From IMG/VR virus record IMGVR_UViG_3300044640_001495, positions 186,001 through 250,000 of that record: DNA of 64,000 nt; one strand, 5' to 3'. Made by a program: the position numbers and the translations under genes. The notes beneath the pieces were generated by a model. It worked only from the letters and a program-made list of their open reading frames with translations, made no database searches and was not told where the DNA came from. Of the stretch, positions 11,449-64,000 are shown in pieces. Numbering within the stretch: the stretch's first letter is position 1; each line of letters starts with the position of its first letter.

Positions 11449-11465
11449 TTTACTATCCTATCATG

Positions 11466-11471
11466 TATTTA
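11466..11471 (-). promoter_or_regulatory. Late promoter core TAAATA for gp6
   Basis: TATTTA on the + strand in the gp25-gp6 gap; the same motif precedes many structural genes. Confidence 0.6.
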
Positions 11472-11489
11472 ACTATAAAAATAAACTGC

Positions 11490-11927: not shown

Positions 11928-11928
11928 T

Positions 11929-15839: not shown

Positions 15840-15840
15840 T

Positions 15841-16140: not shown

Positions 16141-17510
16141 TAGATGTATCCTTGGCCGCCAACAATTTGACCGTTGGCGTAACTTTTGAGATTGAATTGT
16201 CTTAATCTTGTTCTATTATAAATTGGCGCTACTGTTACCGATATAGTGCTCATTATAGGCACCCACGTTGGTGCTCCACCTTTAGGAGTATACTTGATAT
16301 AACTTGTATCATCTTTGAAATCAACTGAAAAACTTTTTACAATTACAGGAACATTATTAAAAACTCTTGCACCGTATCCAGTGAGGTTACAGATAATAGG
16401 CGGATTGCCTACGTTTTCGCCCGAACCAAAAAACATCTTGGTGGCTGTTTTTAAAAACGTAGTTCCCTCAATCCAATATTGTGCATCAAGTTCATTTTCT
16501 ACTGAGAACTCTCCAGAAATTTGTATATCATCAACCTGACTGTTCTTATAGGCATAGAATGGTTGTATATTATGGATTGGCTCTATCTGAGTATAGTTGG
16601 CCTTGGAAGATACTGTGATGTTTGGAAGATAAGGAAAAACAAAACCATTGGTGTCCACAAGTCTATTGAATGCTGTGCCAAACAATCCAAAATTGCAATT
16701 TATTCTCACACGCCAATCATTTACTGCGCCCGGCTTTAACTCGACAAACGATCCTTGTTGGGTAAATAATTCAGCACCGCTAGGAAGATTCTTACCTCTG
16801 GCCATACTTAAAAGATTGTTTACCATTCCTGCTGCACCTGATACTTTACCGGCAAGTGCAGCAATACCACCACCTAACCCGCCACTGGCCAATCCTAATT
16901 TGTCTAAACTTGCCCCTATCGCAGCACCAACATTACTGATACCACCAGCAATACCACCTACTTGGCCAGCAACACCGCCAAGTGCTCCGGCGACTCCCGA
17001 AATTGCACTAGTAGCATTTGAGGCTAGTCCTTGTAGAGCACCTCCAATGCCTGTGGCATTTGACGCAAGGCTCTGTACTGTGCTGTTGATACCGCCTAGA
17101 GCACCGGTGACTCCAGCCAGTGCTCCTTTGGCATCATTAGCAAGATTTCCTGCTGCGGCTGTGAACCCGTTTAGACCTGTACCTATTTCTCCGCTCAAAC
17201 GGCCAACGGTGGCATCTAAATTTGATTTTAATGAAGCAAAATTTTCGGGAGCTTTTTTAATCGCTGCTGCGGCATCATTGGCCGCAGCTTCAACTTGTGT
17301 TGACACATTTGCAACCAATCTTGCTAAAGGATTACTGTTAGGTCCCGAAGAAGCTGTTAATGCACCCCCACCAAATGCTGCCGTTAATTTTTCATTAATG
17401 CCTCTGTTGTTAGCAACCTGTTCAGCCGTGATACCTTCAGGATCGCCGCTGGCTCGGTTGATTCGTGCAGCTTCTTGTGCTGGAGTTTCAGGATAAGAGT
17501 TACGTGCCAT
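16140..17510 (-). CDS. Baseplate/tail-tube initiator (gp48/gp54-like) with a long Gly/Ala-rich N-terminal extension
   Basis: C-terminal FVFPYLPNITVS..ANY...GNPPIICNLTGYG..FNNVPVIVKSFSVDF tube-fold motif. ATG at 17510 with an AAGGA SD is preferred over TTG at 17519. Confidence 0.65.
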   Translation of the reverse strand: MARNSYPETPAQEAARINRASGDPEGITAEQVANNRGINEKLTAAFGGGALTASSGPNSNPLARLVANVSTQVEAAANDAAAAIKKAPENFASLKSNLDATVGRLSGEIGTGLNGFTAAAGNLANDAKGALAGVTGALGGINSTVQSLASNATGIGGALQGLASNATSAISGVAGALGGVAGQVGGIAGGISNVGAAIGASLDKLGLASGGLGGGIAALAGKVSGAAGMVNNLLSMARGKNLPSGAELFTQQGSFVELKPGAVNDWRVRINCNFGLFGTAFNRLVDTNGFVFPYLPNITVSSKANYTQIEPIHNIQPFYAYKNSQVDDIQISGEFSVENELDAQYWIEGTTFLKTATKMFFGSGENVGNPPIICNLTGYGARVFNNVPVIVKSFSVDFKDDTSYIKYTPKGGAPTWVPIMSTISVTVAPIYNRTRLRQFNLKSYANGQIVGGQGYI

Positions 17511-54100: not shown

Positions 54101-56519
54101 CAGTGCAGGAGATGCAGCAGCAACTTCGCCAGACGGTGTCACTTGGACTCTAAGAGACGGTTCATATGCATCCTTTGATATCACAGAGACCGCACAGAAC
54201 GTAAACACTGCCTATGCAGAGACAGCTACATTAACAAGTGGCACATGGAGTGATGTTATTTGGACCGGCACACAGTTTGTTGCTGTTGGTTACAGCGGTG
54301 CAGCTGGTCTAGTTGCAACCAGCACAACCGGTACATCATGGACTAATGCTACATTGCCCACAGTTAACAGCACATATGAATATACCACAGTGGCCTATAA
54401 CGGCTCAAACCAATATGTTGCAATCATTGGCGGAAACGGCGGCACTAGAAATATTGCTACATCTCCTGATGCAGTGACCTGGACAGGAGCACTGAACGCT
54501 CTAACTACTGTTTCTTTTTGGAAAGACCTAGCCTACGGCAACGCAACTTATGTGGCCATAATGGGAGATCTCAACAGGATCAACTATTCAGCCAACGGAA
54601 CAACATGGACATCAGTAACGCTAGGCGGTGTAGCGTCGAGTGAGATGAGTGCTATAGCTTATGGTGCAATCGGTGGAACTAACTACTTTGTTACCGTTGC
54701 TGGTTATTCAACAGGTAGTCAAGTATCTTCTTATTCTACAAATAACGGTGTTGCTTGGACTTCAGCTGCTTCACTACCTAGTTCAGACTTCTGGGCAGAT
54801 GTGGCATTTGGCAACAGCAGATTTGTTACTGTTGCAGGCGGAACAGGTTCTACTTCAACCAAGGCAGCATATTCAACCAACGGCACAAGTTGGACAGCAG
54901 CAACGCTACCAGGTGCAGCCACACGTTGGAACAAGATTGTCTACGGTGGCGGAGCATTTACTGCATTTGCTTACAACTCAAATAGAACTGCTTACTCAGT
55001 AGACGGTATTACTTGGGTTGAAGGAAATACACAAGCAGCCACTAGAAACTGGGGACCTGCAGCATACGGAAACACTAAAAACGTTGTATTAGCGACAGGC
55101 ACAGCAATCGGATCTTACAACGACTTTGCATTGAATACCAACTATCTAACCACTTCAAGCACAACTACCAAGTTAAACGTCAATGACAGAATTAGATTTA
55201 TCAGCGATTCTGCAGGTTCTGAAATATTTGGTGGAGTTAGAGCTGACTCAGGTGGCCAGTTATGGTATTATGTAACCAGCGTGGTTGACTCAACAAGATT
55301 TACACTGTCACAAACACTGGGTGGTGCTAATATTACACTGACCACAGGCAGCGGTTCTATGTTGGCTTTATCATCCAAGACCTATGTGGCCAGTGCGTTG
55401 GGCAACAACAACGGTACTCCAAATTGGGTGGTATTGGCGCAGAACAGCCAAGGAGTGCAAAATATTAGACAAGGTGCTACAGCTCGTGCTCGTGCTTATG
55501 TGTTAGATGATGCACTAACAGAAATTTGGATACATGAGCCAGGATCGGGTTATGTGACTGCTCCAACAATGACCATTACTGACCCTAATAACACAGGTGC
55601 AGATGCTCCTACTGTGGTACGTATTGGTAATGGTGCTATTGCACAGCCAACATATACCAATAGAGGCACAAGTTACTCGGCTGCGGCTACTACTATAATT
55701 GGCAACGGTTATGCCGATAACTATCAGGTGGGAACTTTTGTGGGATTCACTGGTCTCAGTGGTATTCCAACAGCTGGTTCAAACGTGCAGATAGCTGGCA
55801 TAGATGACATATGGTACAGACTGGTCAATGTTTCCAGCGTGTTGCCTTTGGCTGATGGCACCTACTCTGCTACTCTGCAGGTAAGCCCACCAGTTGGTGT
55901 TGCTGAAGCTCCAGAGCACTTGAGCGGCGGAATTATAAGACGTAGATACAGTCAGGTACGACTAACTGGACACGATTTCTTGGACATAGGTACAGGCAAT
56001 CAAGTGAATACCAATTATCCAGGACTGCCAGTTACTGACCCGATTCCTGCCAATGAAACCATAGGCAGTGGTGGTGGTAGAGTATTCTACACTTCAACGG
56101 ACCAGGACGGTAACTTTAGAGTTGGTGGATTGTTTAACGTTGAGCAATCAACGGGTGTTGCAACGCTGAATGCTGACGCTTTTAACATTGCAGGATTGAA
56201 CGAGTTGAGTTTGGGCTCAGTGGCACTAGGCGGTTCAGGTGCAACAATTACTGAATTCTCAACAGACCCGTTCTTTACACAAGATTCCGACAATATTATA
56301 CCTACACAGCGAGCAATTAAAGCCTACATTACCAGCCAAATTGGCGGCGGCGGGTCTAGTTTGAACGTAAATAGTCTTACAGCCGGTGTTATATTTGTGG
56401 CCGGACAAACTATTACTACAACTACAAATGTGGCAATAAACATAAATACTAAGGTGAATTTCAAAGGCGGTATTGCTGGTTTACCCCTTGTGTTAAATTA
56501 CTTCTTACTAAACAATTGA
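48159..56519 (+). CDS. Giant tail fibre/appendage protein B (2786 aa), paralogue of A
   Basis: Same architecture as 42569 (MAEFKL.R start; YSQVRLTGHDFLD.G.GN and GGRVFYTSTDQDGNFRVG C-terminal block), with extra helical CxRD repeats and a second propeller. Confidence 0.8.
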   Translation: MAEFKLGRLRFVWKSDWVTGTTYFKDDIVAYGGKTFLCVVGHTAAADFYTNLDNIPTKWNQFSDGQDWKGNWGSSTLYKINDIVKYGGYLYICNDGHTSSSTLEANQGDWDIFAESFDWQNAWSTGYVYKVNDLVKYGGYVYLCNTGHTSAATAASGLEADQAKWDLFNKGLDWKGVWSTSVRYKVGDLVKYGGKTYVCNLHHTSNASAASGLEADQAKWDYFNEGIEYKGQWVTATRYKINDVVKNGGGTYICVIEHTGAGNFTTDYNAARWNQFVEGIEFEGEWSAGPTYQPGDIVRYGGNSYIAKTAHISSGGSPPSTNTTDWDLFTTGFRLQGDWNSGTAYKIGEIVRLGGYTYVATADNTNQSPPNASYWSLLNQGIDWEGDWVLASSYVLGDAVKFGANSYIAVQAHTSTTGLDRPDNDTIGAYWNLLTAGNEESALSATGDLVYYSGGGPTRLPVGDEGQVLTVENGLPTWNYFGQVAKVFYVAPHGVNSPAPTYGVTVDKPWASVRYACEQITNGTEYPNAAYLLKQNRTFIQKEIVEYVNYQITYYTTTVPTPSSIWYNFVNDSISACQRDMGLIVDAIVHDLTHTGNVKTLEATESYFSAGVLIAAINDEEFQLIEAVNYGLVLISRILANLAPAQNYQTLNGIGAGSRIKQIIDAAYTAEATAYTQCESLAGILTAALAAGVDTGLPVLNTPGYTLQVKTGQYYEVLPIPVFPNTAVVGDELRSTRISPAGSYTSANDKAKSIATLQRLQSITDEIITNAAVTPTTGNIATQDTTSQKAGNVGSATAVSSVSANAAEIKDIVTNNTPNAYVKPTPTGGTGNAFTAGYFDAARLINANKAFLQDEVSEWILAQIAASTVGFVGFTYTGTRRTKCERDVGLIVDAVVYDLTYGGNLATQIAARSYYSLGVFLEPAAELAPALAVQLRIKDIIDNIATGDTAGWTKTTALSQDVSGTAGSAPAATAAQARIQEIYDTINTGTEPTTIVPDITWPAAALITARTALNTARTTIRSNAVQHVKKLFPTLSFDETLCSRDVGYMVDALGFDLMFGSNFLSIQSGLSYQRGTTSTLVVLNSQLAAQQAVIDFISVEAQKIVATGAVVLADGLWTDIINYANTGTVPLTVGTNSPTEDLDRINGAKILQLNKEFMVAEANAYIADTFKATVTSSDAATDVFTCSSQTWMVAGDTVRFTGTVFGGIAINTTYYVLSTGLTATTFKVSTSLNGTAVDLGAASGSMVVKWYYNSASCENDVRNYIESIAYDMVYTGNYKSVLAARYYRNSLTGSKLEDLFYFKNGSGLRNCTLTGLDGSSDGTNTGYQSALTTTANEYGTYRPRAGAYASLDPGWGPNDTSAWVTNKSTYVQNVTTFGIGCVGQKIDGSLHAGGNDSIVSNDFTQVLSDGIGAWITNLGRAELVSVFSYYNYIGYLAENGGKIRATNGNNSYGTFGAVAEFIDISETPVTGTINNRGTEADVRSVLTDGTQILLHEFGNAGSENSSASFTISGTGISVATVADEFRDGAVFQVRLTDPGDSTGPGGVGYITAQSLAQAGNTTQITLAASDINSSAAYVGMSIYMIGGLGAGQYGYINSYSAASKVATVYKESTGTPGWDHVIPGTPIVAAMDLTSNYQITPRLQFSAPPFTKTTADLPSSQTWSDVVFGDGYAVYSGVASTVSSGSGSLATFNVTRRYGIYSVTIQAGGVLYTVGNTLTVLGSSLGGTSPANDITVTVAAVTSPGGAITRFTSSGTAVTAKFVAIAGGVNSSTNAAATSLDGITWTAMTMPSSQQWSAIAYGVVSNVSYYVAVARESSVAAYSRDGVNWTASNLNEVADWCDIDYGNGVFVAVSESDSSSTFRAWSSDNGINWNTTTFASGAKAIAYGFSRFVVVEGNFSNAVAYSTNGATWTVTTLPSNDDSTESNWVDIAYGNGRYVAISDSSAMAAYSFNGATWYKSNLPSIAEWSSIGYGQGVFYVTSAGDAAATSPDGVTWTLRDGSYASFDITETAQNVNTAYAETATLTSGTWSDVIWTGTQFVAVGYSGAAGLVATSTTGTSWTNATLPTVNSTYEYTTVAYNGSNQYVAIIGGNGGTRNIATSPDAVTWTGALNALTTVSFWKDLAYGNATYVAIMGDLNRINYSANGTTWTSVTLGGVASSEMSAIAYGAIGGTNYFVTVAGYSTGSQVSSYSTNNGVAWTSAASLPSSDFWADVAFGNSRFVTVAGGTGSTSTKAAYSTNGTSWTAATLPGAATRWNKIVYGGGAFTAFAYNSNRTAYSVDGITWVEGNTQAATRNWGPAAYGNTKNVVLATGTAIGSYNDFALNTNYLTTSSTTTKLNVNDRIRFISDSAGSEIFGGVRADSGGQLWYYVTSVVDSTRFTLSQTLGGANITLTTGSGSMLALSSKTYVASALGNNNGTPNWVVLAQNSQGVQNIRQGATARARAYVLDDALTEIWIHEPGSGYVTAPTMTITDPNNTGADAPTVVRIGNGAIAQPTYTNRGTSYSAAATTIIGNGYADNYQVGTFVGFTGLSGIPTAGSNVQIAGIDDIWYRLVNVSSVLPLADGTYSATLQVSPPVGVAEAPEHLSGGIIRRRYSQVRLTGHDFLDIGTGNQVNTNYPGLPVTDPIPANETIGSGGGRVFYTSTDQDGNFRVGGLFNVEQSTGVATLNADAFNIAGLNELSLGSVALGGSGATITEFSTDPFFTQDSDNIIPTQRAIKAYITSQIGGGGSSLNVNSLTAGVIFVAGQTITTTTNVAININTKVNFKGGIAGLPLVLNYFLLNN
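48627..48820 (+). repeat. Identical 29-bp direct repeat (48627-48655 and 48792-48820) within the N-terminal repeat array
   Basis: GGTCTTGAAGCCGATCAAGCCAAATGGGA occurs twice. Confidence 0.9.
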
Positions 56520-56532
56520 TGGAGATCAGAGA

Positions 56533-56853
56533 ATGGCAACAGGATTATTAGGTCAAGCGGCACCGGCCGCAGCAACATACACTACACTGTACACAGTGCC
56601 TGCAACTACTTTTACAGTATTGGGCCTCAGTCTCTGTAATCGCGGAACAACCACAGTGTCAGTGAGAGTGGCGTTGGCCACATCAGCAACACCAACAAAC
56701 TCAGAATTTATAGAATATAATGCTGAAATTGGTGCTAACGGAGTATTGGAAAGAACCGGTATCATGATGAACGCAAACAAATTGCTGGTAATCTATGCTA
56801 GTAATGCAAACGTATCGGCCAGTGCCTTTGGCATTGAAACTTCAACATTATAA
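56533..56853 (+). CDS. Small beta-sandwich virion protein (adaptor paralogue 3)
   Basis: TTLYTVPA..FTVLGLSLCNR..VSVRVALA..FIEYNAEIGANGVLERTGI. Confidence 0.7.
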   Translation: MATGLLGQAAPAAATYTTLYTVPATTFTVLGLSLCNRGTTTVSVRVALATSATPTNSEFIEYNAEIGANGVLERTGIMMNANKLLVIYASNANVSASAFGIETSTL

Positions 56854-56874: not shown

Positions 56875-57201
56875 ATGGGACGACAAGTATCATCCTTTGG
56901 AACAGATAGTGTAACAAACAGAACTGTGACAACATCACAGTCAGTGCTAGCCGGCGAACGCATATTTGCAAACGCCACATCAGCATCGTTTACTCTGACA
57001 CTGCCTGCTTCACCTAGTGAAGGGGACACTATACAAATCATCGACGTGGCAGGAATTTTCGCAACAAATCCTGTTACCGTTGCAAGAAACGGATTAAAAA
57101 TCGCCAATCTTACAGAAGATTTGATTTTGAACCTCAACAACGCAGCAGTGACCTTGATATATTCCGGTGCAACATTTGGCTGGGTATTCATTGGACCATA
57201 A
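56875..57201 (+). CDS. Stand-alone fibre-attachment domain (T4 gp9/gp10/gp34 N-terminal-like)
   Basis: FTLTLPASPSEGDTIQIIDVAG.FATNPVTVARNG.KI....EDL.L...NAAVTLIY.G.T.GW. Confidence 0.65.
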   Translation: MGRQVSSFGTDSVTNRTVTTSQSVLAGERIFANATSASFTLTLPASPSEGDTIQIIDVAGIFATNPVTVARNGLKIANLTEDLILNLNNAAVTLIYSGATFGWVFIGP

Positions 57202-57213
57202 TCGGAACTTATA

Positions 57214-58242
57214 ATGGCAAAACTATCTGACCTATTATCTACAAGAGAGATTACAGCCAACCAGAATAATCTGGAAAAGGGCAAGGTCTGGGTCGTAAGT
57301 CCAACTGCAATGGCCACTTGTATTAGAAGTGACAACTTGTGGTGTTGGACATCTCCGGGTTGTGGAACACTCACTATTGAAATGTGGGGTGCTGCTGGTA
57401 GTGGCTCTCGCATGTGTTGCTGCGGCTTTGGACTACCTGGAAATGCACCTGGCTATACCAAAAAAACTCTAGCTGTATTTTGCGGATCAAACATTTGTGG
57501 CTGTCCAGGCCAGGCCTGCAATGCGCATGATCTTTGCTTCTCAGGATGTAGTCTACCCACATATTTGCAGTGGAAACAGGCTCGAGACCTATGCGGATAC
57601 ACCAGCGGTTGCATGTGCGCTCAAGGTGGTCGAGCAGGTACATCTATCTGTTCCACTGGTACCGGCCCCTACTGCTGTTTCCGTGCTGCAGGATTTTGCA
57701 ATTCACAATTTACTTCTGGTGCTGCTGGTTGCGGTATTATCTGCAATCACTGCTCAGGAGGCTTCCTTGCTTGCGGTTATGGTGGCGACATCAACTGCTG
57801 CGGCTGTATTTCATACATGCACTGGATGTGCGACATCGGAAACGCAAGACCCTGTTATGTACACCAATTTATTGCTTTTGCAGCAGGTATATTTGCTGAA
57901 CAGGGTGGTATAATTGCATCCAAGCCCGACGAAGATCCAGAATACTCACAGTGGTCAGGTGCAGGATTCATGGAACACATGCATACTCTACATGCTACCA
58001 GTCGTTCGCCCACTGGCGGCGTTCCTTGGATGGGATGTTGGACCGGTGGTCAATTCTGCGGTTGCTATGAAAACTCTGGCTGTGTGCCATATTCACCTTA
58101 TGGTGTAGGCGGAGCTGCACCTATGCCTTGCGATGGTGTCAGAGATCACGGCAAACGTGGCGGCCACGGTGCCATACGATTAACATACAGAGGTTCGGGC
58201 GCCTTGAATCAAAACTGCGCAGTACTAGGAAGGGGAATATAA
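57214..58242 (+). CDS. Cys/Gly-rich fibre-tip/adhesin-like protein 1
   Basis: IEMWGAAGSGSRMCCC..GNAPGY..K..GGHGAIRLTY glycine-rich domain frame; about 34 Cys in 342 aa. Confidence 0.7.
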   Translation: MAKLSDLLSTREITANQNNLEKGKVWVVSPTAMATCIRSDNLWCWTSPGCGTLTIEMWGAAGSGSRMCCCGFGLPGNAPGYTKKTLAVFCGSNICGCPGQACNAHDLCFSGCSLPTYLQWKQARDLCGYTSGCMCAQGGRAGTSICSTGTGPYCCFRAAGFCNSQFTSGAAGCGIICNHCSGGFLACGYGGDINCCGCISYMHWMCDIGNARPCYVHQFIAFAAGIFAEQGGIIASKPDEDPEYSQWSGAGFMEHMHTLHATSRSPTGGVPWMGCWTGGQFCGCYENSGCVPYSPYGVGGAAPMPCDGVRDHGKRGGHGAIRLTYRGSGALNQNCAVLGRGI

Positions 58243-58243
58243 A

Positions 58244-59482
58244 ATGGCACTACTCACACAATTATTAGGTAATCGCGAGCAGGCCTTCGAAGACAATCTT
58301 GAAAAAGGTAGAATTTGGGTCTATACAGACGGCAATATGTACACCTCATTCTGTAATGGCTTTTGCTGGCGTTCTCCGGGTACAGGATGTATAGTGATCG
58401 AATCCTGGGGTGCTGCTGGTTCAGGAGCACAGATGTGCTGCTGTGGTGCAGGCCTACCAGGAAATGCACCTGCGTACACAAAAAAATGTCTTTGCGTGAT
58501 TGCAGGCAACTATGTCTGCGGCTACATTGGACGTTCATGCAATAACTCATCAGCACTATGCTTTAGAGGTTGTTCAGAAGCCACCTGCGTTTGCTGGTTT
58601 GGATGTTCACCAAAAGCCCTATATGAAGGTGGCTACTATCCAGGTGACAGCGACAGCTTTAAGGGCAACAATCCTTGGGGTTGGGGCTCAGGCGGCGGCG
58701 ATCCATTGAGCTCAAATGAAGGCAACGTAAACTTTCAAAACGGCGGCAATTGCGGTATCACTGGCGGCAACACATTGAACGCTAGTGGCAACGGCAACTG
58801 CTGTTCGTGGACTCAATGTCGTGCAGCAGGTGCAACTAACGGCTGCATATGCGCACAAGGCGGCAAAGGCGGCATATCAATTTGCATAGATTCAATATCT
58901 GCATATACAGTCTTTAGATGTAATTATTTCTGTGGCAGCCCCCTTGGCCCAGGCAACTCGGGTTGTAATACAGGATCACATTGCGGTATGATCTGCAACA
59001 TTTGTCAAACAACGGATGCATCACTAGGATTTATTGGCTGTGGCTACGGTGGCGACGTCAACTGCTGCGGTGGTTGGTCATGCGTATCATTCCAGGGCTG
59101 CTGGCCAATTTGCCCATGTCTAACACAGTATCATGTGCCTGTAGCCGCAAATATTTTTGCAGAAGAAGGCGGACAGTTTTCGTACACAACAAATTCAGAC
59201 GGACAAGGGCCGACTGAATGGTCAGGAGCTCCGACACTCAATCAAATTAATGCCTTGACTACCATGAGTAGACAGCCTGGTCCAAATGCCTACACTACAT
59301 GTTGGCCTGGTGAGCGAGGTTGTGGCTGCTATGAAATGCAGGGCTGCATGAACTTTTTTCCATACGGTGTTCCGGGCGCAGCTCCCCATCCATGTCCAGG
59401 TGTGCGTGATCATGCCAGTCGTGGTGGTATGGGAGCTGTAAGAATTAAATATATTCCAGCAACAGGAGGCACATCGTACTAA
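58244..59482 (+). CDS. Cys/Gly-rich fibre-tip/adhesin-like protein 2
   Basis: Paralogue (IESWGAAGSGAQMCCC...GGMGAVRIKY); about 40 Cys in 412 aa. Confidence 0.7.
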   Translation: MALLTQLLGNREQAFEDNLEKGRIWVYTDGNMYTSFCNGFCWRSPGTGCIVIESWGAAGSGAQMCCCGAGLPGNAPAYTKKCLCVIAGNYVCGYIGRSCNNSSALCFRGCSEATCVCWFGCSPKALYEGGYYPGDSDSFKGNNPWGWGSGGGDPLSSNEGNVNFQNGGNCGITGGNTLNASGNGNCCSWTQCRAAGATNGCICAQGGKGGISICIDSISAYTVFRCNYFCGSPLGPGNSGCNTGSHCGMICNICQTTDASLGFIGCGYGGDVNCCGGWSCVSFQGCWPICPCLTQYHVPVAANIFAEEGGQFSYTTNSDGQGPTEWSGAPTLNQINALTTMSRQPGPNAYTTCWPGERGCGCYEMQGCMNFFPYGVPGAAPHPCPGVRDHASRGGMGAVRIKYIPATGGTSY

Positions 59483-59483
59483 C

Positions 59484-60476
59484 ATGGCAAACTTAAAAAC
59501 ACTTGTAGAAGCCAAACTTGATCAAATAGAGTTTGACGAAACAAATCTAGACAAGGGCAGAGTCTGGGCCTATAGCCCAGGTTCAGAATACACAAACTTT
59601 GTCAACGGATTTTGTTGGATTGCCTGTACCACAGGCAAGGTCATTTTGGATGTGTGGGGCGCTGGCGGCAGTGGTGCTAGAATGTGCTGCTGCGGACACG
59701 GTGTGCCAGGAAATCCAGGTGCATGGTCACGCAAATGTATTTGCGTAATAGCTGGCTGTTATATCTGTGGTCACGTGGGCAAAAGCTGCAACAATGCTGA
59801 TGCACTGTGTTTCCGTGGGTGTTCCGAAGCATCATGTGTGTGCTGGTATGGCAGGAATCCTTCAACTGGCGCTGCCATAAACGGCTGCATGTGTTCACAA
59901 GGTGGACGTGGGGGTACAACCTATTGCAATCCATCGGGCGTAATTTTCTGCTGTTTCATCAGCGGCAACTTCTGTAACACCAACTATTCCAACGGTACCT
60001 GCGGCATTATTTGCAATTACGGTTCGGGTACAGGATCATGCTGCGCAGAGTCCTACGGCGGCGATATAAATAAACGCGGTGGATTTAGCTGTGTGACATT
60101 CTGGACCTGTTATTCAAACTGCCCATGTTCAACACACTATCACACAGCCATTCCTCCAGGCATGTTTGCCTGTGATGGCGGCGTAGTCAGTACAGGTATG
60201 GATGACAACAACGGATTTTCCAACTGGTCAGGAATGGGATTCCATCAGTTCAGCCAAGGTATCAATGCCATGAGCCGCTCACCAAATCGAGGAATCCCAT
60301 TTACTGCATGTTGGACCTCCAACAGAGCCTGTGGCTGCTATGACGTACAAGGATGTATGCCATTCTTTCCAGTAGGAGTAGGTGGTTTACCAGCTAATCC
60401 CTGCGGTGATGTTCGTGACAACGGATGGCGCGGCGGCCTAGGATTGGTTAGAATTAATTTTATTGCAAAGGATTAA
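59484..60476 (+). CDS. Cys/Gly-rich fibre-tip/adhesin-like protein 3
   Basis: Paralogue (LDVWGAGGSGARMCCC...GGLGLVRINF); about 34 Cys in 330 aa. Confidence 0.7.
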   Translation: MANLKTLVEAKLDQIEFDETNLDKGRVWAYSPGSEYTNFVNGFCWIACTTGKVILDVWGAGGSGARMCCCGHGVPGNPGAWSRKCICVIAGCYICGHVGKSCNNADALCFRGCSEASCVCWYGRNPSTGAAINGCMCSQGGRGGTTYCNPSGVIFCCFISGNFCNTNYSNGTCGIICNYGSGTGSCCAESYGGDINKRGGFSCVTFWTCYSNCPCSTHYHTAIPPGMFACDGGVVSTGMDDNNGFSNWSGMGFHQFSQGINAMSRSPNRGIPFTACWTSNRACGCYDVQGCMPFFPVGVGGLPANPCGDVRDNGWRGGLGLVRINFIAKD

Positions 60477-60478
60477 AA

Positions 60479-61123
60479 ATGAGAAAAGCGTTTACAACGG
60501 TTATGCCGGACGAACCATATAAAACAACCACCAAGAAAAATATCACAGTGGATTGCGTTTACATCGGTAAAAGATATCTGCTGGTTAGATTCAACAACGA
60601 TGGCACCATATTTGCCTTGGAAAAACAAGGTGAAACACTGCCGGAAGTTGAGATGTACAAACTCACAGAGCAACAACTGGCAGCAGAAAAACAATTTCAG
60701 ATTGTTATAGATGCAGAAGTCAATACATGGGAAGCTGCACATCTAACACACGATTATGAACACGGAGCAGTAGCTGACCCAACATTTACTCTAGCAGATG
60801 GCAGTACATGGACCTATCACTATGATGATTTTCATGGCGCATTGGATCAACCCTACTATACCAACGACATGAGGTACGATCGTGCTACTAATACTTTGAT
60901 TCGTCCTAGATATCGTACTCATGCGGTAACCAAAGAAACGTTTTGGGCAAACATGAACGATCAACTCAAGGCCTTTGAACTTGCTGCCGGATCAACTAGC
61001 TATCTACCAGAAAGACTAACAGAAATTAGAGCACATAGAGATTGGTTAAAAACTGCTATTACAAAATATGCAGGTGAAGATCACTGGAAAGTTCCGTTCC
61101 CAACTAGTACGCCTTCAATTTAA
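60479..61123 (+). CDS. Hypothetical protein, possible fibre assembly chaperone
   Basis: C-terminal IRAHRDWLK..ITKY....HWKVPFPTSTP resembles the YRQ.LRDLP...WP ends of tail fibre assembly proteins; follows the Cys-rich trio. Confidence 0.5.
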   Translation: MRKAFTTVMPDEPYKTTTKKNITVDCVYIGKRYLLVRFNNDGTIFALEKQGETLPEVEMYKLTEQQLAAEKQFQIVIDAEVNTWEAAHLTHDYEHGAVADPTFTLADGSTWTYHYDDFHGALDQPYYTNDMRYDRATNTLIRPRYRTHAVTKETFWANMNDQLKAFELAAGSTSYLPERLTEIRAHRDWLKTAITKYAGEDHWKVPFPTSTPSI

Positions 61124-61142
61124 ATAAATTAAAAGCCAAGAA

Positions 61143-61199
61143 AGGCCTTGCACTTGTATCCGAGAGGATATATAATCTAAGTGCAAGGCTTATTTTTTT
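61143..61199 (+). promoter_or_regulatory. sigma70 promoter (TTGCAC-17-TATAAT) embedded in a terminator-like inverted repeat
   Basis: -35 at 61148-61153, -10 at 61171-61176; arms GCCTTGCACTT 61145-61155 and AAGTGCAAGGC 61179-61189, followed by a T tract. Confidence 0.7.
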
Positions 61200-61208
61200 G
61201 GAGTTTAA

Positions 61209-62150
61209 ATGTCTAGATCGAAAGCATTTTTTATAAATGGCGGCGCTGGTAGAATGATTAGTTCTGTTCCAGCTTTTGAAAAATACCTAGAGGAATCAGA
61301 TGATAAAGATTTTATCATTGTTTGCGAAGGTGGAACAGATGTCTTTAAAGGACATCCTAAACTAGATGATCGTGCCTACGACATCTGGCACAAGGGTCTT
61401 TTCAAAGACTACTTGAAAAATCGTGAAATTGTCACAACAGAACCCTATAGAGTCTGGGAATACTACAACCAACAATGTTCAATTGCACAGGCCTTTGACA
61501 TACAGGTCAACAACAAAGGACTACGAGAACTGCCAAAACCTACACTTAGGTTGTCCAAAGATGAACTACTGAATGGTAGATCAGTGGTCAGCGAAGTAAA
61601 GAAAAAACTTAAAAAAGAAAAACTAGTGGTATTTCAACCCTATGGCCGAGGTGTTGAATACATTGACGAAACCTTGCTTGACCGCACAGCACGAAGTTTT
61701 GAATTAAAAGACGTAAAAGCCATAGTGAAAAAGCTGCAACAAAATGACTATGCAGTGATAATGATGAGCGAGTTCAAAACAGATCTATCAGATGCTAAAC
61801 TCAAAGAAGAAGTGGCCATGCCTGAAAATGTCAACATGCGAGTTTGGGCAGCAATAATCAAATATGCCGATCATTTCTTGGGTTGCGATAGTTTGGGACA
61901 ACACCTTGCATATTCAATGGAAACTCCATCAACAATTATCACAGGAGCCACATATCCTATAAATGTGTCTTATCCGGATTGCGAGTATTTTGAAATACTA
62001 GACATGGGCGAAATACATAGAGAATACGATCCTATCAGAATTTTACCTGATGAGCGAGTGAACAGAATAAATGAAAATATCATGTCAATGACAGACGACA
62101 TAACTACACTAGTAGTAAATCACGTATTAGGAAAAAAAGATGACAGTTAA
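61209..62150 (+). CDS. Glycosyltransferase, GT-B fold, family 9 (heptosyltransferase)-like
   Basis: FFINGGAGRMISSVPA N-terminal motif, VVFQPYG, WAAIIKYADHFLGCDSLGQHLA. Confidence 0.7.
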   Translation: MSRSKAFFINGGAGRMISSVPAFEKYLEESDDKDFIIVCEGGTDVFKGHPKLDDRAYDIWHKGLFKDYLKNREIVTTEPYRVWEYYNQQCSIAQAFDIQVNNKGLRELPKPTLRLSKDELLNGRSVVSEVKKKLKKEKLVVFQPYGRGVEYIDETLLDRTARSFELKDVKAIVKKLQQNDYAVIMMSEFKTDLSDAKLKEEVAMPENVNMRVWAAIIKYADHFLGCDSLGQHLAYSMETPSTIITGATYPINVSYPDCEYFEILDMGEIHREYDPIRILPDERVNRINENIMSMTDDITTLVVNHVLGKKDDS

Positions 62151-63969
62151 AACCATATCAGCAAAAAAATCAAATAAACCCGTGTGGGTCGCAGCCATTG
62201 CTCGCGGACATAATGCAGGCATCTGTCTACTAAAAGACGGAGAGATTGTATTTTCTATCGAAGAAGAAAGATTGAGTCGTCAAAAGTATGACGGCGGTCC
62301 GCTTGCGTCAATGGTTAAGATTTTAGAATACACAGATAAGCTAGACTTTTTGGTTGTAGCACATACACAGAGTCTTGCAGATTCTTCGGGAAAAATTGAT
62401 TATACCGGCGACGATATGTACACTGGCCTAGCTCGAAAGTTAGGACTAATTGATAGAAAAGTAGCTAACCTACACAAACATCCTCAGGTGATTGATCTCA
62501 GTTTCATGCATCACAAGCTGCATGCTGCCTGCGCATTTTATCGTTCAGGTTGGGAAGATGCAGTTTCTTTGATTGTTGATGGTGCAGGCACATTCTATCA
62601 AATGAGTTACAACGACCAACCACTGTGGGTATGGGAAGTTGAGTCTATTGTTGATTGTGCATATCCTGCAGATTTCAAAACTCTTTACAAAAATTACGGT
62701 GCAAGAGATCCTATTGTTGGAACATTTCAAGCTGAATTTCCTTCTGCAAATTTAGGCGAGGATGGCGAAACACACGAAGCATGGGTTAGTGATCGTGCAG
62801 GCATTGTCAAGGCCTACGAGGGAGTAACTGAATATTGTGGATTCTCAGCTATTGAAGCTGGAAAGACTATGGGATTATTTCCATACGGAAAAGCCAACAA
62901 TAAAATTCCTCCGTTGTTTGATACAACATCTAAAATTCCGTTAACAAATAGAAACTTATTGGTGCCAAAATATCCAATGAGTAGCATGGTTAATTCACAA
63001 CTATTTGATTATATTGACGAATTTCCTGAAGATCCTAAAGGTGATGTTACCTACATGGACAATCGTAGAGATATGGCCTATGCTGTTCAGACACAGACGC
63101 AAGAACAGGTGGTAAGACTAATCAAATTAGCCGCAGAAAAAAGTGGAAAGAATCGTGTTGTTATTTCCGGAGGCTATGGATTAAACTGTGTTGCTAACTA
63201 TCATTATCTAGAAGAATTAAAAGATAGCGGCATTGAAATTTATGTTGAACCTATCAGCAATGATGCAGGTACAGCAATGGGCGCAGGTCTGCTGTTCTAT
63301 CATGGCATGTATGACGATACTACCATACGTAAATACGATACTTTGTATTATGGCCCTGTACACACTTATACCAGTGAAGAAATTGCTGCAAAGGCAGAAG
63401 CTGCTAATGCAGAAGTTACAGATGCTACAGCTAAAGACATTGTCAAGCTGTTACGTGAAAAAAACATTGTGACTATCTTCCAAGGACGTTCAGAAAACGG
63501 ACCACGTGCCCTAGGCAATCGTTCAGTGCTGTTTGATCCAACATTTGAAGACGGCAAAGACTATGTGAATGCAGTCAAGCATCGTGAATACTTCCGCCCA
63601 TTTGCGGGAAGTATTCTAGAAGAAGATGTACACGAGTGGTTTGATTTACGTGGAATGAAAAACAGTCCATTCATGATGTACGCTGTAAACTGCCAGCCAG
63701 GAGTTGAAGAAAAGATTCCAAGCATTATTCACGAAGATCATACCTGCCGTATTCAAACAGTTAATCCTGAGCAGAACAAGCACTACTATGATTTGATCAA
63801 AGCATTCAAAGATGAAACAGGCGTTCCTATCCTGTTTAATACCAGCTTTAATCTAGGTGGCGAACCCCTAGTAGAAACACTAGATGATGCTATTTGGACA
63901 TTACAAAAGTCAGAAATTGAATACCTGTACTTGCCCGAGTACAGTAAACTAATTAAAATTGCCAACTAA
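62140..63969 (+). CDS. O-carbamoyltransferase (CmcH/NodU/TobZ family)
   Basis: EEERLSRQK, HHKLHA, VDGAG, GKTMGL, SGGYGLNCVAN, NDAGTAMG, GPRALGNRS, KHREYFRPFA, NTSFNLGGEP. Confidence 0.95.
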   Translation: MTVKTISAKKSNKPVWVAAIARGHNAGICLLKDGEIVFSIEEERLSRQKYDGGPLASMVKILEYTDKLDFLVVAHTQSLADSSGKIDYTGDDMYTGLARKLGLIDRKVANLHKHPQVIDLSFMHHKLHAACAFYRSGWEDAVSLIVDGAGTFYQMSYNDQPLWVWEVESIVDCAYPADFKTLYKNYGARDPIVGTFQAEFPSANLGEDGETHEAWVSDRAGIVKAYEGVTEYCGFSAIEAGKTMGLFPYGKANNKIPPLFDTTSKIPLTNRNLLVPKYPMSSMVNSQLFDYIDEFPEDPKGDVTYMDNRRDMAYAVQTQTQEQVVRLIKLAAEKSGKNRVVISGGYGLNCVANYHYLEELKDSGIEIYVEPISNDAGTAMGAGLLFYHGMYDDTTIRKYDTLYYGPVHTYTSEEIAAKAEAANAEVTDATAKDIVKLLREKNIVTIFQGRSENGPRALGNRSVLFDPTFEDGKDYVNAVKHREYFRPFAGSILEEDVHEWFDLRGMKNSPFMMYAVNCQPGVEEKIPSIIHEDHTCRIQTVNPEQNKHYYDLIKAFKDETGVPILFNTSFNLGGEPLVETLDDAIWTLQKSEIEYLYLPEYSKLIKIAN

Positions 63970-63991
63970 AAAAGCCCGCAAGGGCTTTTTT
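63968..63991 (+). terminator. Intrinsic terminator
   Basis: AAAAAAGCCC-GCAA-GGGCTTTTTT. Confidence 0.9.
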
Positions 63992-64000
63992 GTTTTATGA

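What the first reader, a model, noticed from the sequence alone, without database searches (positions are those of the whole stretch)
57214..63969. Three approximately 10%-cysteine glycine-rich paralogues, a chaperone-like gene and an adjacent GT9/carbamoyltransferase pair: possible modified or metal-loaded fibre-tip system
Seen: three tandem, tightly spaced paralogues (about 34, 40 and 34 Cys by my count) share NL(E/D)KG.(V/I)W, WGA.GSG..MCCC, LCF.GCS, GC.C.QGG, YGGD.N, CGCY...GC and PC..VRD...RGG.G..R. They sit after a stand-alone fibre-attachment domain gene. They are followed by a possible assembly chaperone, then a GT9-like glycosyltransferase and an intact NodU/CmcH carbamoyltransferase. 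Known: the WG.GG.G...GG.G.VRI.Y frame is the glycine-rich (polyglycine II) domain of phage adhesins, and such Cys density is unusual for proteins folded in a reducing cytoplasm. Inference: a heterotrimeric receptor-binding tip stabilised by many metal or Fe-S sites or by post-lysis disulfides, possibly glycosylated or carbamoylated by the neighbouring enzymes. I recall similar genes in aquatic T4-like phages, so the novelty would be the function rather than the existence.
Basis: partly seen in the sequence, partly recalled or inferred. Interest (0 to 1): 0.65.

Follow-up and report, generated by a model that had tools for sequence, protein, structure and literature searches.

The report
Cysteine-rich fibre tips plus sugar enzymes
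A large lake-water T4-like phage carries three old, roughly 10%-cysteine copies of a known type of tail-fibre tip protein, and a sugar-transferase gene that travels with such cysteine-rich tail proteins in three unrelated phage groups, which suggests an untested chemical modification of the parts that recognise the host.

Summary
There are three tandem paralogues of 342, 412 and 330 aa with 34, 40 and 34 Cys, and all quoted motifs are present. They follow two small fibre-adaptor genes and precede a 214-aa gene, a GT9-like gene and a TobZ/NodU-type carbamoyltransferase.

An AlphaFold model of the third paralogue matches the cyanophage Pam3 fibre gp24 (Z 15.2). That fibre has an N-terminal helix, a TNF-like sandwich and a glycine-rich polyglycine-type domain. 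The model also matches the Bxb1 tail tip and the ALK/LTK glycine-rich domain. No sequence family (Pfam, NCBIfam, PDB) recognises the three proteins.

The whole module is conserved in about 70 related metagenomic loci and, much diverged, in S-CAM1, S-SSM7 and P-SSM2. Among isolates, the cyanophages that hold the Cys-rich family are the same ones that hold the GT. Distant GT homologues in a Vibrio N4-like phage and in Aeromonas phage HJ05 each sit next to the most Cys-rich annotated protein of their genome.

The heterotrimer, the role of the cysteines (disulfide or metal), the chaperone role of the 214-aa protein and the enzymes' substrate all remain inferences.

Verdict: a Cys-rich variant of a known fibre-tip kind, with a newly documented link to a GT9-like enzyme. 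Interest is moderate to high.

The parts
48159..56519 (+). Giant fibre protein (2786 aa) directly upstream of the module. Its N-terminus is an array of CBM5/12 modules. It is a paralogue of 42569-48106.
   Evidence: PHROG tail fibre families phrog_9851, phrog_4527 and others. Pfam CBM_5_12 E 4.5e-50 with 8 stretches.
56533..56853 (+). 106-aa small fibre-related protein, conserved as the first gene of the module.
   Evidence: phrog_11338 'tail fiber protein' E 1.5e-8. Present in nearly all related loci and in S-CAM1 and P-SSM2.
56875..57201 (+). 108-aa stand-alone domain resembling the N-terminal anchor segment of large tail fibre and spike proteins. Putative adaptor.
   Evidence: 16 PHROG families, matching about residues 88-175 of 1000-aa tail spike and fibre proteins (E down to 1e-21). 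Pfam T4_gp9_10_N is weak (E 0.061, below cut-off). Conserved position.
57214..58242 (+). Cys-rich paralogue 1 (342 aa, 34 Cys): fibre-tip protein with a TNF-like sandwich and a glycine-rich domain.
   Evidence: phrog_4205 E 1.2e-11. Forms its own orthologue clade with support 0.999.
58244..59482 (+). Cys-rich paralogue 2 (412 aa, 40 Cys). It carries a hypervariable Gly/Asn-rich insertion of about 70 aa (residues about 130-200).
   Evidence: The insertion is 33-51% conserved against a 68% mean among orthologues. Own clade with support 0.999.
59484..60476 (+). Cys-rich paralogue 3 (330 aa, 34 Cys). This is the protein that was modelled.
   Evidence: AF2 model with pLDDT 81.5 and pTM 0.80. Pam3 fibre 7ypx_A Z 15.2, 193 aa, rmsd 3.1; Bxb1 9d93_Qa Z 11.9; ALK GRD Z 8-10.
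60479..61123 (+). 214-aa protein with an N-terminal beta domain and a C-terminal helical hairpin. Candidate fibre chaperone by position and shape only.
   Evidence: AF2 pLDDT 95.9. No significant PDB fold match. Homologous to S-CAM1 SXBG_00223 (hhalign 98.8%). One or two copies in every complete locus.
61124..61208 (+). Intergenic hairpin followed by a U-run (terminator or attenuator-like) between the fibre block and the enzyme pair.
   Evidence: -34.7 kcal/mol, z -7.9, 0 of 200 shuffles fold as well. Hairpins of -25 to -35 kcal/mol occur in 34 of 44 distinct orthologous gaps. Classical terminator hairpins occupy the same place in S-CAM1 and P-SSM2.
61209..62150 (+). GT9-like (heptosyltransferase-family) glycosyltransferase, 313 aa.
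   Evidence: PF01075 E 0.014, RfaQ E 3e-4, below cut-offs. Homologues S-CAM1 at 22.0 bits and Vibrio SBP1 at 25.4 bits reach the 22-bit cut-off. Atlas neighbours are named ADP-heptose:LPS heptosyltransferase. The GT9 C-terminal motif aligns to E. coli WaaF.
62140..63969 (+). TobZ/NodU/CmcH-type O-carbamoyltransferase, 609 aa. Its start overlaps the GT stop by 11 nt.
   Evidence: Carbam_trans_C E 2.9e-58 and Carbam_trans_N E 1.4e-25. PDB 7xb6, GdmN, NovN and TobZ at E 2e-56 to 1e-39.
63967..63992 (+). Intrinsic-terminator-like hairpin with a T-run that closes the GT-carbamoyltransferase pair.

Best explanation
Shown: the three genes encode old, non-redundant paralogues of a phage fibre-tip protein. 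The fold is that of cyanophage Pam3 gp24: a short N-terminal helix, a TNF-like beta-sandwich and a glycine-rich, polyglycine-type distal domain. This version has about 10% strongly conserved cysteine.

Inferred from context: the three proteins form the receptor-binding end of a fibre module. The module runs from a giant CBM5/12-bearing fibre, through the 106-aa and 108-aa adaptor-like proteins and the three tips, to a dedicated folding helper of 214 aa. The variable loops, especially the insertion in paralogue 2, would contact the host.

Inferred: the cysteines lie largely as CxC, CC and CCC inside the sandwich strands and next to the glycine motifs. They would lock the fold, most likely as disulfide staples formed once the particle is in oxic water, with at least one thiol per chain often left for an inter-protein bond or a metal.

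Inferred from gene linkage: behind an attenuator-like hairpin lies a translationally coupled two-gene unit, a GT9-like glycosyltransferase and a TobZ-type carbamoyltransferase. It belongs functionally to this module. The most likely mechanism is that the GT puts a sugar on the Cys-rich tail proteins in the cytoplasm, as bacterial GT9-type enzymes do on autotransporter adhesins. The sugar would be heptose-type in those relatives that also carry heptose-synthesis genes. The carbamoyltransferase would then carbamoylate that sugar.
For: Fold. The Pam3 fibre scores Z 15.2 over 193 residues, standing clear of unrelated rows at Z 5 or less. The Bxb1 tail tip scores Z 11.9 and the ALK/LTK GRD Z 8-10. 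The Pam3 architecture and its adjacent chaperone are described in PMC9608196 and PMC9942802.

Context: fibre and adaptor PHROG hits.

Conservation: the module order 106aa-108aa-Cys x2-3-D x1-2-GT-CT holds in essentially all of about 70 loci that have both flanks. It also holds in S-CAM1, S-SSM7 and P-SSM2.

Paralogues: position-specific clades with supports of 0.85-0.999. A lineage that moved one copy 23 kb upstream still keeps three.

Cysteines: Cys conservation is 0.90-0.94 against 0.63-0.72 for other residues, and the variable segments are localised. In the model, 13.6% of strand residues are Cys, with CxC in strands.

GT linkage: among 50,697 phage records, the cyanophages with the Cys-rich family are the same set as those with the GT. 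A broad family profile finds nothing in S-PM2, S-SM1 or P-SSM4. In Syn9 it finds only Cys-poor glycine-rich proteins that have no GT beside them. GT homologues in Vibrio phage SBP1 and Aeromonas phage HJ05 abut a 925-aa tail protein (41 Cys) and a 559-aa protein with a glycine-rich, Cys-rich C-terminus (23 Cys). Each is the most Cys-rich annotated protein of its genome.

Sugar: heptose-synthesis genes follow the pair in S-CAM1, P-SSM2 and S-SSM7.

Expression: lake metatranscriptome contigs of close relatives cover all six genes.
Against: There is no direct evidence that any of these proteins is in the virion. The cyanophages with published virion proteomes (S-SM1, Syn9, S-PM2) lack the family.

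The GT9 assignment of the window's own protein is below Pfam and NCBIfam cut-offs, and a profile of close orthologues finds no GT9 structure by sequence.

A strong hairpin separates the enzymes from the fibre genes, so they may be regulated apart.

This genome and its near-complete 353-364-kb relatives have no GmhA-type isomerase, and the window's own record has no PfkB kinase. A heptose donor is therefore not provided by the phage here.

The literature reads the cyanophage sugar genes as LPS or host-surface genes (PMC3037559; PMC12801897).

The carbamoyltransferase is absent beside the GT in the Vibrio and Aeromonas phages, and it occurs without the GT in other cyanophages (Table 3 of PMC3037559).

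The 214-aa protein has no fold match to known fibre chaperones.

Much of the synteny evidence comes from related phages and is not independent. The independent lineages number about three.
Confidence: 0.6

Rival explanations
1. One reading: the three paralogues assemble 1:1:1 into one heterotrimeric tip, as the three tandemly encoded C1q chains do in their TNF-like head.
For: Three position-specific orthogroups are kept over long divergence. Three copies are kept even when one gene has moved. S-CAM1 and S-SSM7 also have three. Gene spacing of 1 nt suggests coupled, equimolar translation. TNF/C1q-like folds appear among the weaker structural matches at Z 4-5.
Against: P-SSM2 has two copies only. 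The closest solved relative, Pam3 gp24, is a homotrimer. In one lineage a copy lies 23 kb away, next to the giant fibre genes, which fits one tip per fibre type. No stoichiometry test could be run within the 1000-residue limit.
Confidence: 0.35
2. The GT9-like enzyme and the carbamoyltransferase have nothing to do with the fibres. They would remodel a host envelope glycan or make a free carbamoylated sugar, and they sit here only because this is a hot spot for accessory genes.
For: Published interpretation of the cyanophage sugar clusters as LPS or cell-surface genes. A terminator-like hairpin lies between the fibre block and the enzymes. Carbamoyl-heptose is a known LPS-core decoration in Pseudomonas (own knowledge; see also PMC8005017 listed). 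The carbamoyltransferase occurs without the GT in other cyanophages.
Against: The Cys-rich family and the GT have the same distribution among isolates. The GT lies next to the most Cys-rich tail protein in two unrelated lytic phages, inside their structural gene blocks. By a rough neighbour-count estimate of my own, which no tool computed, the chance of that adjacency in all three lineages is about 1e-4.
Confidence: 0.3
3. The cysteines are mainly metal ligands (Zn or Fe thiolate sites, or Fe-S clusters) loaded in the cytoplasm, not disulfides.
For: The proteins fold in a reducing cytoplasm. The motifs CxC, CC, CCC and Cx3C(x2C) resemble those of metallothionein-type and cluster-binding proteins. 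The Cys count is odd in 142 of 275 family members, which is unlike fully disulfide-paired extracellular domains. Cys columns are gained and lost in small groups.
Against: There is no CxxC-pair zinc-knuckle pattern and no conserved His. The Cx3Cx2C triplet is complete in only about 38% of members. Many Cys lie in the strands of a beta-sandwich core, where cross-strand or cross-sheet disulfides are common. A related cyanophage, Pam3, uses disulfides in its baseplate and fibres. No tool here gives coordinates or metal predictions.
Confidence: 0.25
4. The three proteins are not virion parts at all, for example intracellular thiol or metal buffers.
For: No proteomic evidence exists for the family.
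Against: The fibre-tip fold scores Z 15.2. The genes lie between fibre, adaptor and chaperone-like genes in every genome examined. Hypervariable loops are typical of receptor-binding proteins.
Confidence: 0.05

Closest known systems
Cyanophage Pam3 tail fibre gp24 with its chaperone gp25 (PDB 7ypx, 7yfw; PMC9608196, PMC9942802)
   Same: Best structural match: Z 15.2, 193 residues, rmsd 3.1. Same three-part plan of N-terminal helix, TNF-like sandwich and glycine-rich distal domain. A helper gene lies immediately downstream. Disulfides are used in the Pam3 tail machinery.
   Different: No detectable sequence similarity. Glycine is 16-17% overall here, against 39% in the Pam3 glycine-rich domain. 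Cys is about 10% here, whereas for Pam3 gp24 the paper mentions only the fibre-anchoring Cys28. The N-helix is much shorter. There are three paralogues instead of one. The helper protein shows no fold match to gp25. Pam3 has no linked GT9 or carbamoyltransferase gene described.
Salmonella phage S16 / T2-type gp38 adhesin (polyglycine-rich domain)
   Same: A glycine-rich lattice at the fibre tip with hypervariable distal loops. Pam3 gp24 is reported to resemble it.
   Different: gp38 did not appear among the structural matches of the model. Its middle domain is a beta-helix rather than a TNF-like sandwich, and it caps gp37 as a monomer.
ALK/LTK extracellular TNF-like plus glycine-rich (TG) domain, and the mycobacteriophage Bxb1 tail-tip proteins (9d93)
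   Same: Same fold class: Z 8-10 for ALK/LTK and Z 11.9 for Bxb1.
   Different: Pfam Gly_rich and Gly_rich_2 do not match the three proteins. One is a eukaryotic receptor, and the Bxb1 proteins belong to a siphovirus tail tip. Neither is known to be Cys-dense.
Bacterial autotransporter heptosyltransferases Aah/TibC acting on AIDA-I/TibA adhesins (GT9-type)
   Same: A GT9-family enzyme encoded next to a repetitive adhesin that it modifies in the cytoplasm before assembly. This is the mechanism proposed here by analogy.
   Different: TIGR04414 scores 12.9 bits against a cut-off of 200, so the phage GT is not a member. The acceptor residue, the sugar and the activity are all untested.
LPS core heptosyltransferases WaaC/WaaF/WaaQ (Pfam PF01075)
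   Same: Both GT9 signature regions can be aligned. Homologues reach the Pfam cut-off. Heptose-synthesis genes lie beside the pair in S-CAM1, P-SSM2 and S-SSM7.
   Different: The window's protein is below cut-off. The phage family has an invariant Gly-Arg where WaaC has Gly-Asp13 (weak alignment). That this Asp is WaaC's acceptor-activating base is from my own knowledge. The phage protein is shorter, at 313 aa.
TobZ / NodU / CmcH / NovN / GdmN O-carbamoyltransferases, and the related HypF
   Same: Both Pfam domains are well above cut-off, with strong PDB matches.
   Different: It is not a NodU equivalog: 134.7 bits against a cut-off of 1000. The substrate is unknown. HypF, which by my own knowledge carbamoylates a cysteine thiol of HypE, is only a distant relative (E 6e-5).
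Mycobacteriophage virion glycosylation (Freeman et al. 2023, cited)
   Same: Precedent that phage-encoded glycosyltransferases decorate virion proteins.
   Different: Those are capsid and tail-tube C-termini, modified by other GT families in an actinobacterial host. No fibre tip, GT9 enzyme or carbamoylation is involved.

Membership tests
Pam3 gp24-type fibre (helix + TNF-like + glycine-rich domain) | TNF-like beta-sandwich followed or interleaved by a glycine-rich distal domain | tested here: met
   AF2 model with pLDDT 81.5. 7ypx_A Z 15.2, 193 aa, rmsd 3.1, covering model residues 25-330. Foldseek E 1.4e-4.
Pam3 gp24-type fibre (helix + TNF-like + glycine-rich domain) | N-terminal alpha-helical trimerisation and docking domain | tested here: inconclusive
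   One helix only (residues 4-20), with low confidence (pLDDT 47-68). The Pam3 helix bundle is much longer.
Pam3 gp24-type fibre (helix + TNF-like + glycine-rich domain) | Homotrimer | not tested
Pam3 gp24-type fibre (helix + TNF-like + glycine-rich domain) | Dedicated chaperone encoded immediately downstream that binds the distal domains | tested here: inconclusive
   A conserved 214-aa gene occupies that place. It has a beta domain plus a helical hairpin, but no fold match, and the complex prediction gave no verdict.
Pam3 gp24-type fibre (helix + TNF-like + glycine-rich domain) | Presence in the virion at the fibre tip | not testable with these tools
   No proteome exists for a phage that holds the family.
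Pfam Gly_rich (PF12810) / Gly_rich_2 (PF21722) | Sequence match above the gathering score | tested here: not met
   No Pfam hit for any of the three proteins even at E 0.1. Only the Aeromonas HJ05 559-aa protein gives a weak Gly_rich_2 hit (E 0.017).
S16 gp38-type polyglycine adhesin | Structural match to gp38 (three-layer PGII lattice on a beta-helix domain) | tested here: not met
   gp38 (6F45) is absent from both PDB searches of the model. The resemblance holds only through Pam3 gp24.
Glycosyltransferase family 9 (PF01075) | Pfam gathering score | tested here: inconclusive
   The window's protein scores 15.2 bits, below the cut-off of 22. Homologues S-CAM1 (22.0) and Vibrio SBP1 (25.4) meet it, while P-SSM2 and HJ05 fall below. 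Atlas neighbours carry PF01075.
Glycosyltransferase family 9 (PF01075) | C-terminal nucleotide-sugar motif (G.DSG..H.A...G.P....G) | tested here: met
   The phage motif GCDSLGQHLAY....P....G.TYP aligns to the WaaF motif NDSGLMHVAAALNRPLVALYGPSSP. Asp227, Ser228, Gly230 and His232 are invariant in 29 orthologues.
Glycosyltransferase family 9 (PF01075) | N-terminal Gly-Asp (catalytic base of WaaC, from my own knowledge) | tested here: not met
   Gly14-Arg15 is invariant and aligns to WaaC Gly-Asp13 in a low-probability hhalign alignment.
Autotransporter O-heptosyltransferase Aah/TibC (TIGR04414) | Equivalog score | tested here: not met
   12.9 bits against a cut-off of 200.
TobZ/NodU/CmcH carbamoyltransferases | Carbam_trans_N (Kae1-like) and Carbam_trans_C (YrdC-like) domains above cut-off | tested here: met
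   90.9 bits (cut-off 24) and 196.6 bits (cut-off 27). PDB hits at E 2e-56 to 1e-39.
NodU proper (NF041651) | Equivalog score | tested here: not met
   134.7 bits against a cut-off of 1000.
Phage tail assembly chaperone (PF16778) | Pfam match of the 214-aa protein | tested here: not met
   No hit. The protein at the same position in S-SSM7 matches (E 1.1e-9), but it is not demonstrably homologous to the window's protein (hhalign probability 4.9%).
T4 gp9/gp10 N-terminal domain (PF07880), for the 108-aa protein | Pfam gathering score | tested here: not met
   13.8 bits against a cut-off of 25. PHROG tail fibre and spike anchor segments do match.
Fully disulfide-paired extracellular Cys-rich domain | Even cysteine count in nearly all members | tested here: not met
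   142 odd against 133 even among 275 members, and the same split in the aligned core.
Metal or Fe-S binding protein | Bound metal, ligand geometry | not testable with these tools

The most novel reading that the evidence does not exclude
A phage-encoded modification system for receptor-binding proteins. In this reading, a divergent GT9-type transferase glycosylates the Cys-rich fibre tips and a TobZ-type enzyme carbamoylates the product. The transferase has an invariant Arg where LPS heptosyltransferases have their catalytic Asp. The glycosylation might even fall on cysteine sulfur. Alternatively, the carbamoyltransferase might act directly on thiols, as HypF does on HypE. The result would be chemically armoured or retargeted adhesins in aquatic T4-like, N4-like and other phages.
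Probability: 0.2. Interest if true: 0.8.

Novelty: new variant of a known kind. Interest (0 to 1): 0.58.

Why it matters
Receptor-binding proteins decide which hosts a phage can infect. Glycine-rich polyglycine-type tips are a recently recognised and widespread solution.

This variant has one residue in ten as a conserved cysteine. It is kept as three old paralogues and is tied genetically to a GT9-like transferase, and in the cyanophage-type module also to a carbamoyltransferase. That points to post-translational chemistry on tail fibres, which has not been described for T4-like phages.

Cultured members exist (S-CAM1, S-SSM7, P-SSM2, Vibrio SBP1-type, Aeromonas HJ05), so the idea can be tested directly by mass spectrometry and genetics. 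It would also reassign part of the 'LPS gene clusters' of large cyanophages from host-surface remodelling to virion maturation. If the cysteines bind metal, it would bear on trace-metal quotas of aquatic virions.

Tried and rejected
- **DNA and protein BLAST.** Megablast of the region and tblastn of paralogue 1 against 50,697 phage records found nothing. The family is too diverged between genera, so seeds from S-CAM1 and P-SSM2 were used instead.
- **Sequence families.** Pfam and NCBIfam scans and a family-profile search of PDB sequences were all blank for the three proteins.
- **GT against PDB.** Single-sequence and orthologue-profile searches found no GT9 structure.
- **Fold searches of the 214-aa protein.** Only non-specific helical-hairpin matches (Z 7.2 or less) and no Foldseek hit below E 0.09.
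- **Complex prediction, paralogue 3 with the 214-aa protein.** No verdict (best score 0.17, mark 0.32, controls not run). This is evidence neither for nor against binding.
- **T4 late-promoter motif TATAAATA.** 3 matches against 4.2 expected, so it was of no use for timing.
- **Heptose-pathway genes.** No SIS/GmhA domain in the window's record or in five relatives' records. No PfkB kinase in the window's own record. Only cytidylyltransferase-like genes elsewhere.
- **psbA.** None in three relatives' records, two of them near-complete, so I do not call this a cyanophage.
- **Cysteine covariation.** A few coupled columns (85-87 phi 0.73; 120-203 phi 0.53), but the signal is confounded by paralogue type and does not decide between disulfide and metal.
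- **Virion proteome in PMC3037559.** The phages analysed (S-SM1, Syn9, S-PM2) lack the family, and the supplement searches were unproductive.
- **Metatranscriptome contigs.** They cover all genes, but as contigs of relatives they cannot show transcript ends or levels.
- **Model coordinates.** Not available to scripts, so Cys-Cys distances could not be measured.

Full report
**Where the window comes from**

The window is bases 57813-121812 of a 187,679-bp IMG/VR virus record. An identical copy of the region lies in a 353,123-bp record that CheckV rates 98% complete. Lake-water metagenomes hold the stretch completely. The near-complete relatives have no psbA. The source is therefore a freshwater jumbo T4-like myovirus with an unknown host. 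Homologues of the module, however, sit in marine cyanomyoviruses.

**The observation**

The ORF list gives the following genes on the + strand:

| Coordinates | Product |
|---|---|
| 48159-56519 | giant fibre, 2786 aa |
| 56533-56853 | 106 aa |
| 56875-57201 | 108 aa |
| 57214-58242 | paralogue 1, 342 aa |
| 58244-59482 | paralogue 2, 412 aa |
| 59484-60476 | paralogue 3, 330 aa |
| 60479-61123 | 214 aa |
| 61209-62150 | GT9-like, 313 aa |
| 62140-63969 | carbamoyltransferase, 609 aa |

The three paralogues have exactly 34, 40 and 34 Cys (9.7-10.3%) and 16-17.5% Gly. Every other sizeable ORF of the window has 2.1% Cys or less. Their similarity is far beyond chance (E 1e-73).

**What the three proteins are**

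No Pfam or NCBIfam model matches them. Only PHROG 4205, of unknown function, does. A word-based search found 296 relatives, all unnamed.

An AlphaFold2 model of paralogue 3, built on 66 sequences, has pLDDT 81.5 and pTM 0.80. Its structural matches are:
- the tail fibre gp24 of cyanophage Pam3: Z 15.2, 193 residues, rmsd 3.1; Foldseek E 1.4e-4;
- a tail-tip protein of mycobacteriophage Bxb1: Z 11.9;
- the TNF-like plus glycine-rich domain of ALK/LTK: Z 8-10.

Unrelated TNF/C1q-type sandwiches follow at Z 5 or less. A family profile finds no PDB sequence, so the relationship is visible only in the fold.

Pam3 gp24 is a homotrimer. It has an N-terminal helix bundle, a TNF-like domain and a distal lattice of twelve glycine-rich motifs with a hypervariable tip. 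It is folded by gp25, which is encoded next to it.

The S16 gp38 structure itself, however, is not among the matches.

**How this version differs**

Glycine is much lower than in Pam3, and cysteine takes about a tenth of all positions. In the model, Cys makes up 13.6% of strand residues. It often occurs as CxC in the sandwich strands and as CCC or CC next to glycine motifs.

Among orthologues, Cys is the best-conserved residue class, at 0.90-0.94 against 0.63-0.72 for the rest. Variability is concentrated in a few segments, above all the roughly 70-aa Gly/Asn-rich insertion of paralogue 2. That pattern is expected for receptor-contacting loops.

In 275 family members the Cys count is odd in 142 and even in 133. 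Cys columns are often gained or lost singly. This does not fit a fully paired intramolecular disulfide network. It leaves room for inter-protein disulfides, as Pam3 uses to tie fibres to its baseplate, for free thiols or for metal sites. I could not measure S-S distances because the model's coordinates are not exposed. Disulfide versus metal stays open. I favour disulfide staples formed after release, with moderate confidence.

**The module and its history**

Eighty related loci were fetched from IMG/VR. Essentially every locus with both flanks has the order 106 aa, 108-110 aa, two or three Cys-rich genes, one or two copies of the 214-aa gene, GT, carbamoyltransferase.

In a tree of 156 distinct copies, the first, second and third positions form separate clades within each of two sublineages, with supports of 0.85-0.999. 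The triplication is therefore old, and each copy is kept.

In one lineage only two copies sit in the module. The third lies about 23 kb upstream, directly before the giant fibre genes.

The same gene order recurs, strongly diverged, in three cyanophages:
- S-CAM1: three Cys-rich genes with 25-36 Cys;
- S-SSM7: three genes of 261-264 aa with 11% Cys;
- P-SSM2: two genes with 36 Cys each.

In each, a helper-like gene, the GT and the carbamoyltransferase follow. A joint alignment shows the shared frame.

So does a model of three different homotrimeric tips. The two-copy state of P-SSM2 and the homotrimeric Pam3 fibre speak for the second. I rate the heterotrimer at about one in three.

**The flanking small proteins**

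The 108-aa protein matches the anchor segment (about residues 88-175) of many 1000-aa tail spike and fibre families. Its match to Pfam T4_gp9_10_N is only weak. 'Stand-alone attachment domain' is a fair reading.

The 214-aa protein models with pLDDT 95.9 as a beta domain plus a C-terminal helical hairpin, which resembles the general plan of gp25. It has no significant structural match. It is homologous to the S-CAM1 gene in the same place. It is not demonstrably homologous to the S-SSM7 one, which does match Pfam Phage_tail_APC. A complex prediction with paralogue 3 gave no verdict. Its chaperone role remains a positional inference.

**The enzymes**

The carbamoyltransferase is a clear TobZ/NodU/GdmN-type enzyme. 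It is not a NodU equivalog.

The GT is GT9-like, on these grounds:
- It is below cut-off itself.
- The S-CAM1 and Vibrio SBP1 homologues reach the Pfam cut-off.
- Atlas neighbours are named heptosyltransferases.
- The C-terminal nucleotide-sugar motif aligns to E. coli WaaF.

At the N-terminal motif the family has an invariant Gly-Arg where WaaC has Gly-Asp13 (weak alignment). That this Asp is WaaC's acceptor-activating base is from my own knowledge. If the alignment holds, the acceptor chemistry differs from that of LPS heptosyltransferases.

In S-CAM1, P-SSM2 and S-SSM7 the pair is followed by heptose-synthesis genes. No GmhA-type isomerase was found in this phage or its large relatives, and no PfkB kinase in the window's own record. 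The sugar used here is therefore unknown.

A strong hairpin with a U-run lies between the 214-aa gene and the GT: -34.7 kcal/mol, z -7.9. It is conserved in most relatives and in S-CAM1 and P-SSM2. A second terminator follows the carbamoyltransferase. The two enzymes, whose genes overlap by 11 nt, thus form their own unit. They may be read at a lower level than the structural genes, or at another time.

**Do the enzymes belong to the fibres?**

Among 50,697 phage records:
- The GT occurs in S-CAM1, S-CAM3, Sf-FS3, S-SSM7/S-SSM6a, P-SSM2/P-SSM5 and four single-cell marine virus contigs. It also occurs in one lineage of Vibrio N4-like phages and in Aeromonas phage HJ05.
- tblastn from S-CAM1 and P-SSM2 seeds finds the Cys-rich family in the same cyanophage isolates and in two of the four single-cell viruses.
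- A broad family profile finds nothing in S-PM2, S-SM1 or P-SSM4.
- In Syn9 the profile finds only Cys-poor glycine-rich proteins (1-2.5% Cys), which have no GT beside them.

In Vibrio phage SBP1 the GT homologue lies inside the structural block, directly before a 925-aa tail protein with 41 Cys. In Aeromonas HJ05 it lies directly after a 559-aa protein whose C-terminal 320 residues are glycine-rich-domain-like and carry most of its 23 Cys. Each is the most Cys-rich annotated protein of its genome.

Three unrelated lineages with the same adjacency are unlikely by chance. By a rough neighbour count of my own, the probability is about 1e-4.

The link is with the GT, not with the carbamoyltransferase. 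The latter is absent beside the GT in the two non-cyanophage lineages and occurs without the GT in other cyanophages.

Gene linkage does not show the substrate. The published reading of these sugar genes is host-surface or LPS remodelling, and that remains a serious rival.

**Mechanism I consider most likely**

The three tip proteins are made in near-equal amounts and folded with the help of the 214-aa protein. They dock through their short N-terminal helices onto the 106/108-aa adaptor proteins, at the end of a giant CBM5/12-bearing fibre or on the baseplate. After lysis, oxidation of the cysteine network locks them.

The GT9-like enzyme, made from the attenuated downstream unit, adds a sugar to them in the cytoplasm, by analogy with Aah/TibC on AIDA-I/TibA. 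The carbamoyltransferase then carbamoylates that sugar.

- Shown: fold class, paralogy, conservation and gene linkage.
- Inferred: virion location, docking, cysteine chemistry, chaperone role, and the enzymes' substrate and sugar.

**Novelty**

The existence of these genes in aquatic T4-like phages is known only as 'hypothetical proteins' (T4-GC 299/301 in P-SSM2; PHROG 4205). I found no paper that assigns their fold, notes their cysteine content or connects them with the GT9-like gene.

I file them as a new, Cys-rich variant of the known TNF-like plus glycine-rich fibre-tip kind, with a newly documented genetic partner.

Expression evidence is weak. Contigs from four lake metatranscriptomes, mostly 90-99% identical, cover all six genes, including the junction between the 214-aa gene and the GT.

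Noticed in passing
window 42569-48106 and 48159-56519: The two giant paralogous fibre proteins (1845 and 2786 aa) begin with arrays of carbohydrate-binding CBM5/12 modules (5 and 8 stretches, E 2e-45 and 4.5e-50). This is unusual at the N-terminal end of a phage fibre.
   Followed up: partly
whole record (G000); L008 = IMGVR_UViG_3300044640_001495: The module is 100% identical in a 353-kb record rated 98% complete. Relatives reach 364 kb. All full-share holders are lake-water metagenomes, and no psbA was found. The source is a freshwater jumbo T4-like phage of unknown host.
   Followed up: partly
window 61124-61208: A strong hairpin (-34.7 kcal/mol, z -7.9) with a U-run and an embedded TATAAT lies between the fibre block and the enzyme pair. 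Its position is conserved in most relatives and in S-CAM1 and P-SSM2.
   Followed up: yes
L073, L075, L077, L079, L081, L082: One sublineage carries two paralogues of the 214-aa helper gene and a second GT9-like gene after the carbamoyltransferase.
   Followed up: no
L069 10001-10957; G001 and G003 records: In one lineage, one Cys-rich copy has moved about 23 kb upstream to sit directly before the two giant fibre genes, while two copies stay in the module.
   Followed up: partly
L088 (S-SSM7) 7311-7970 and 11043-16873: S-SSM7 has a prolyl-hydroxylase-type 2OG-Fe(II) oxygenase between the chaperone-like gene and the GT. Downstream it has a second oxygenase, a second carbamoyltransferase (Table 3 of PMC3037559 lists three genes for the genome), a tryptophan halogenase and heptose genes. 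These are further candidate protein- or sugar-modifying enzymes at the fibre locus.
   Followed up: no
L099 (Syn9) 356-3828 and 4466-7501: Syn9 gp36, gp38 and gp39 are Cys-poor glycine-rich-domain proteins with 22-35% Gly. gp39 looks internally duplicated or frameshifted. Two tryptophan halogenase genes follow them.
   Followed up: no
L005 13223-13576; L006 13352-13708: Small cupins annotated 'cysteine dioxygenase' sit inside the heptose-synthesis clusters of S-CAM1 and P-SSM2. A sugar-epimerase-type cupin seems more likely. This is an inference and was not tested.
   Followed up: no
window 61209-62150, residues 14-15: The GT family has an invariant Gly-Arg at the place where E. coli WaaC has Gly-Asp13. 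The hhalign alignment supporting this is weak.
   Followed up: partly
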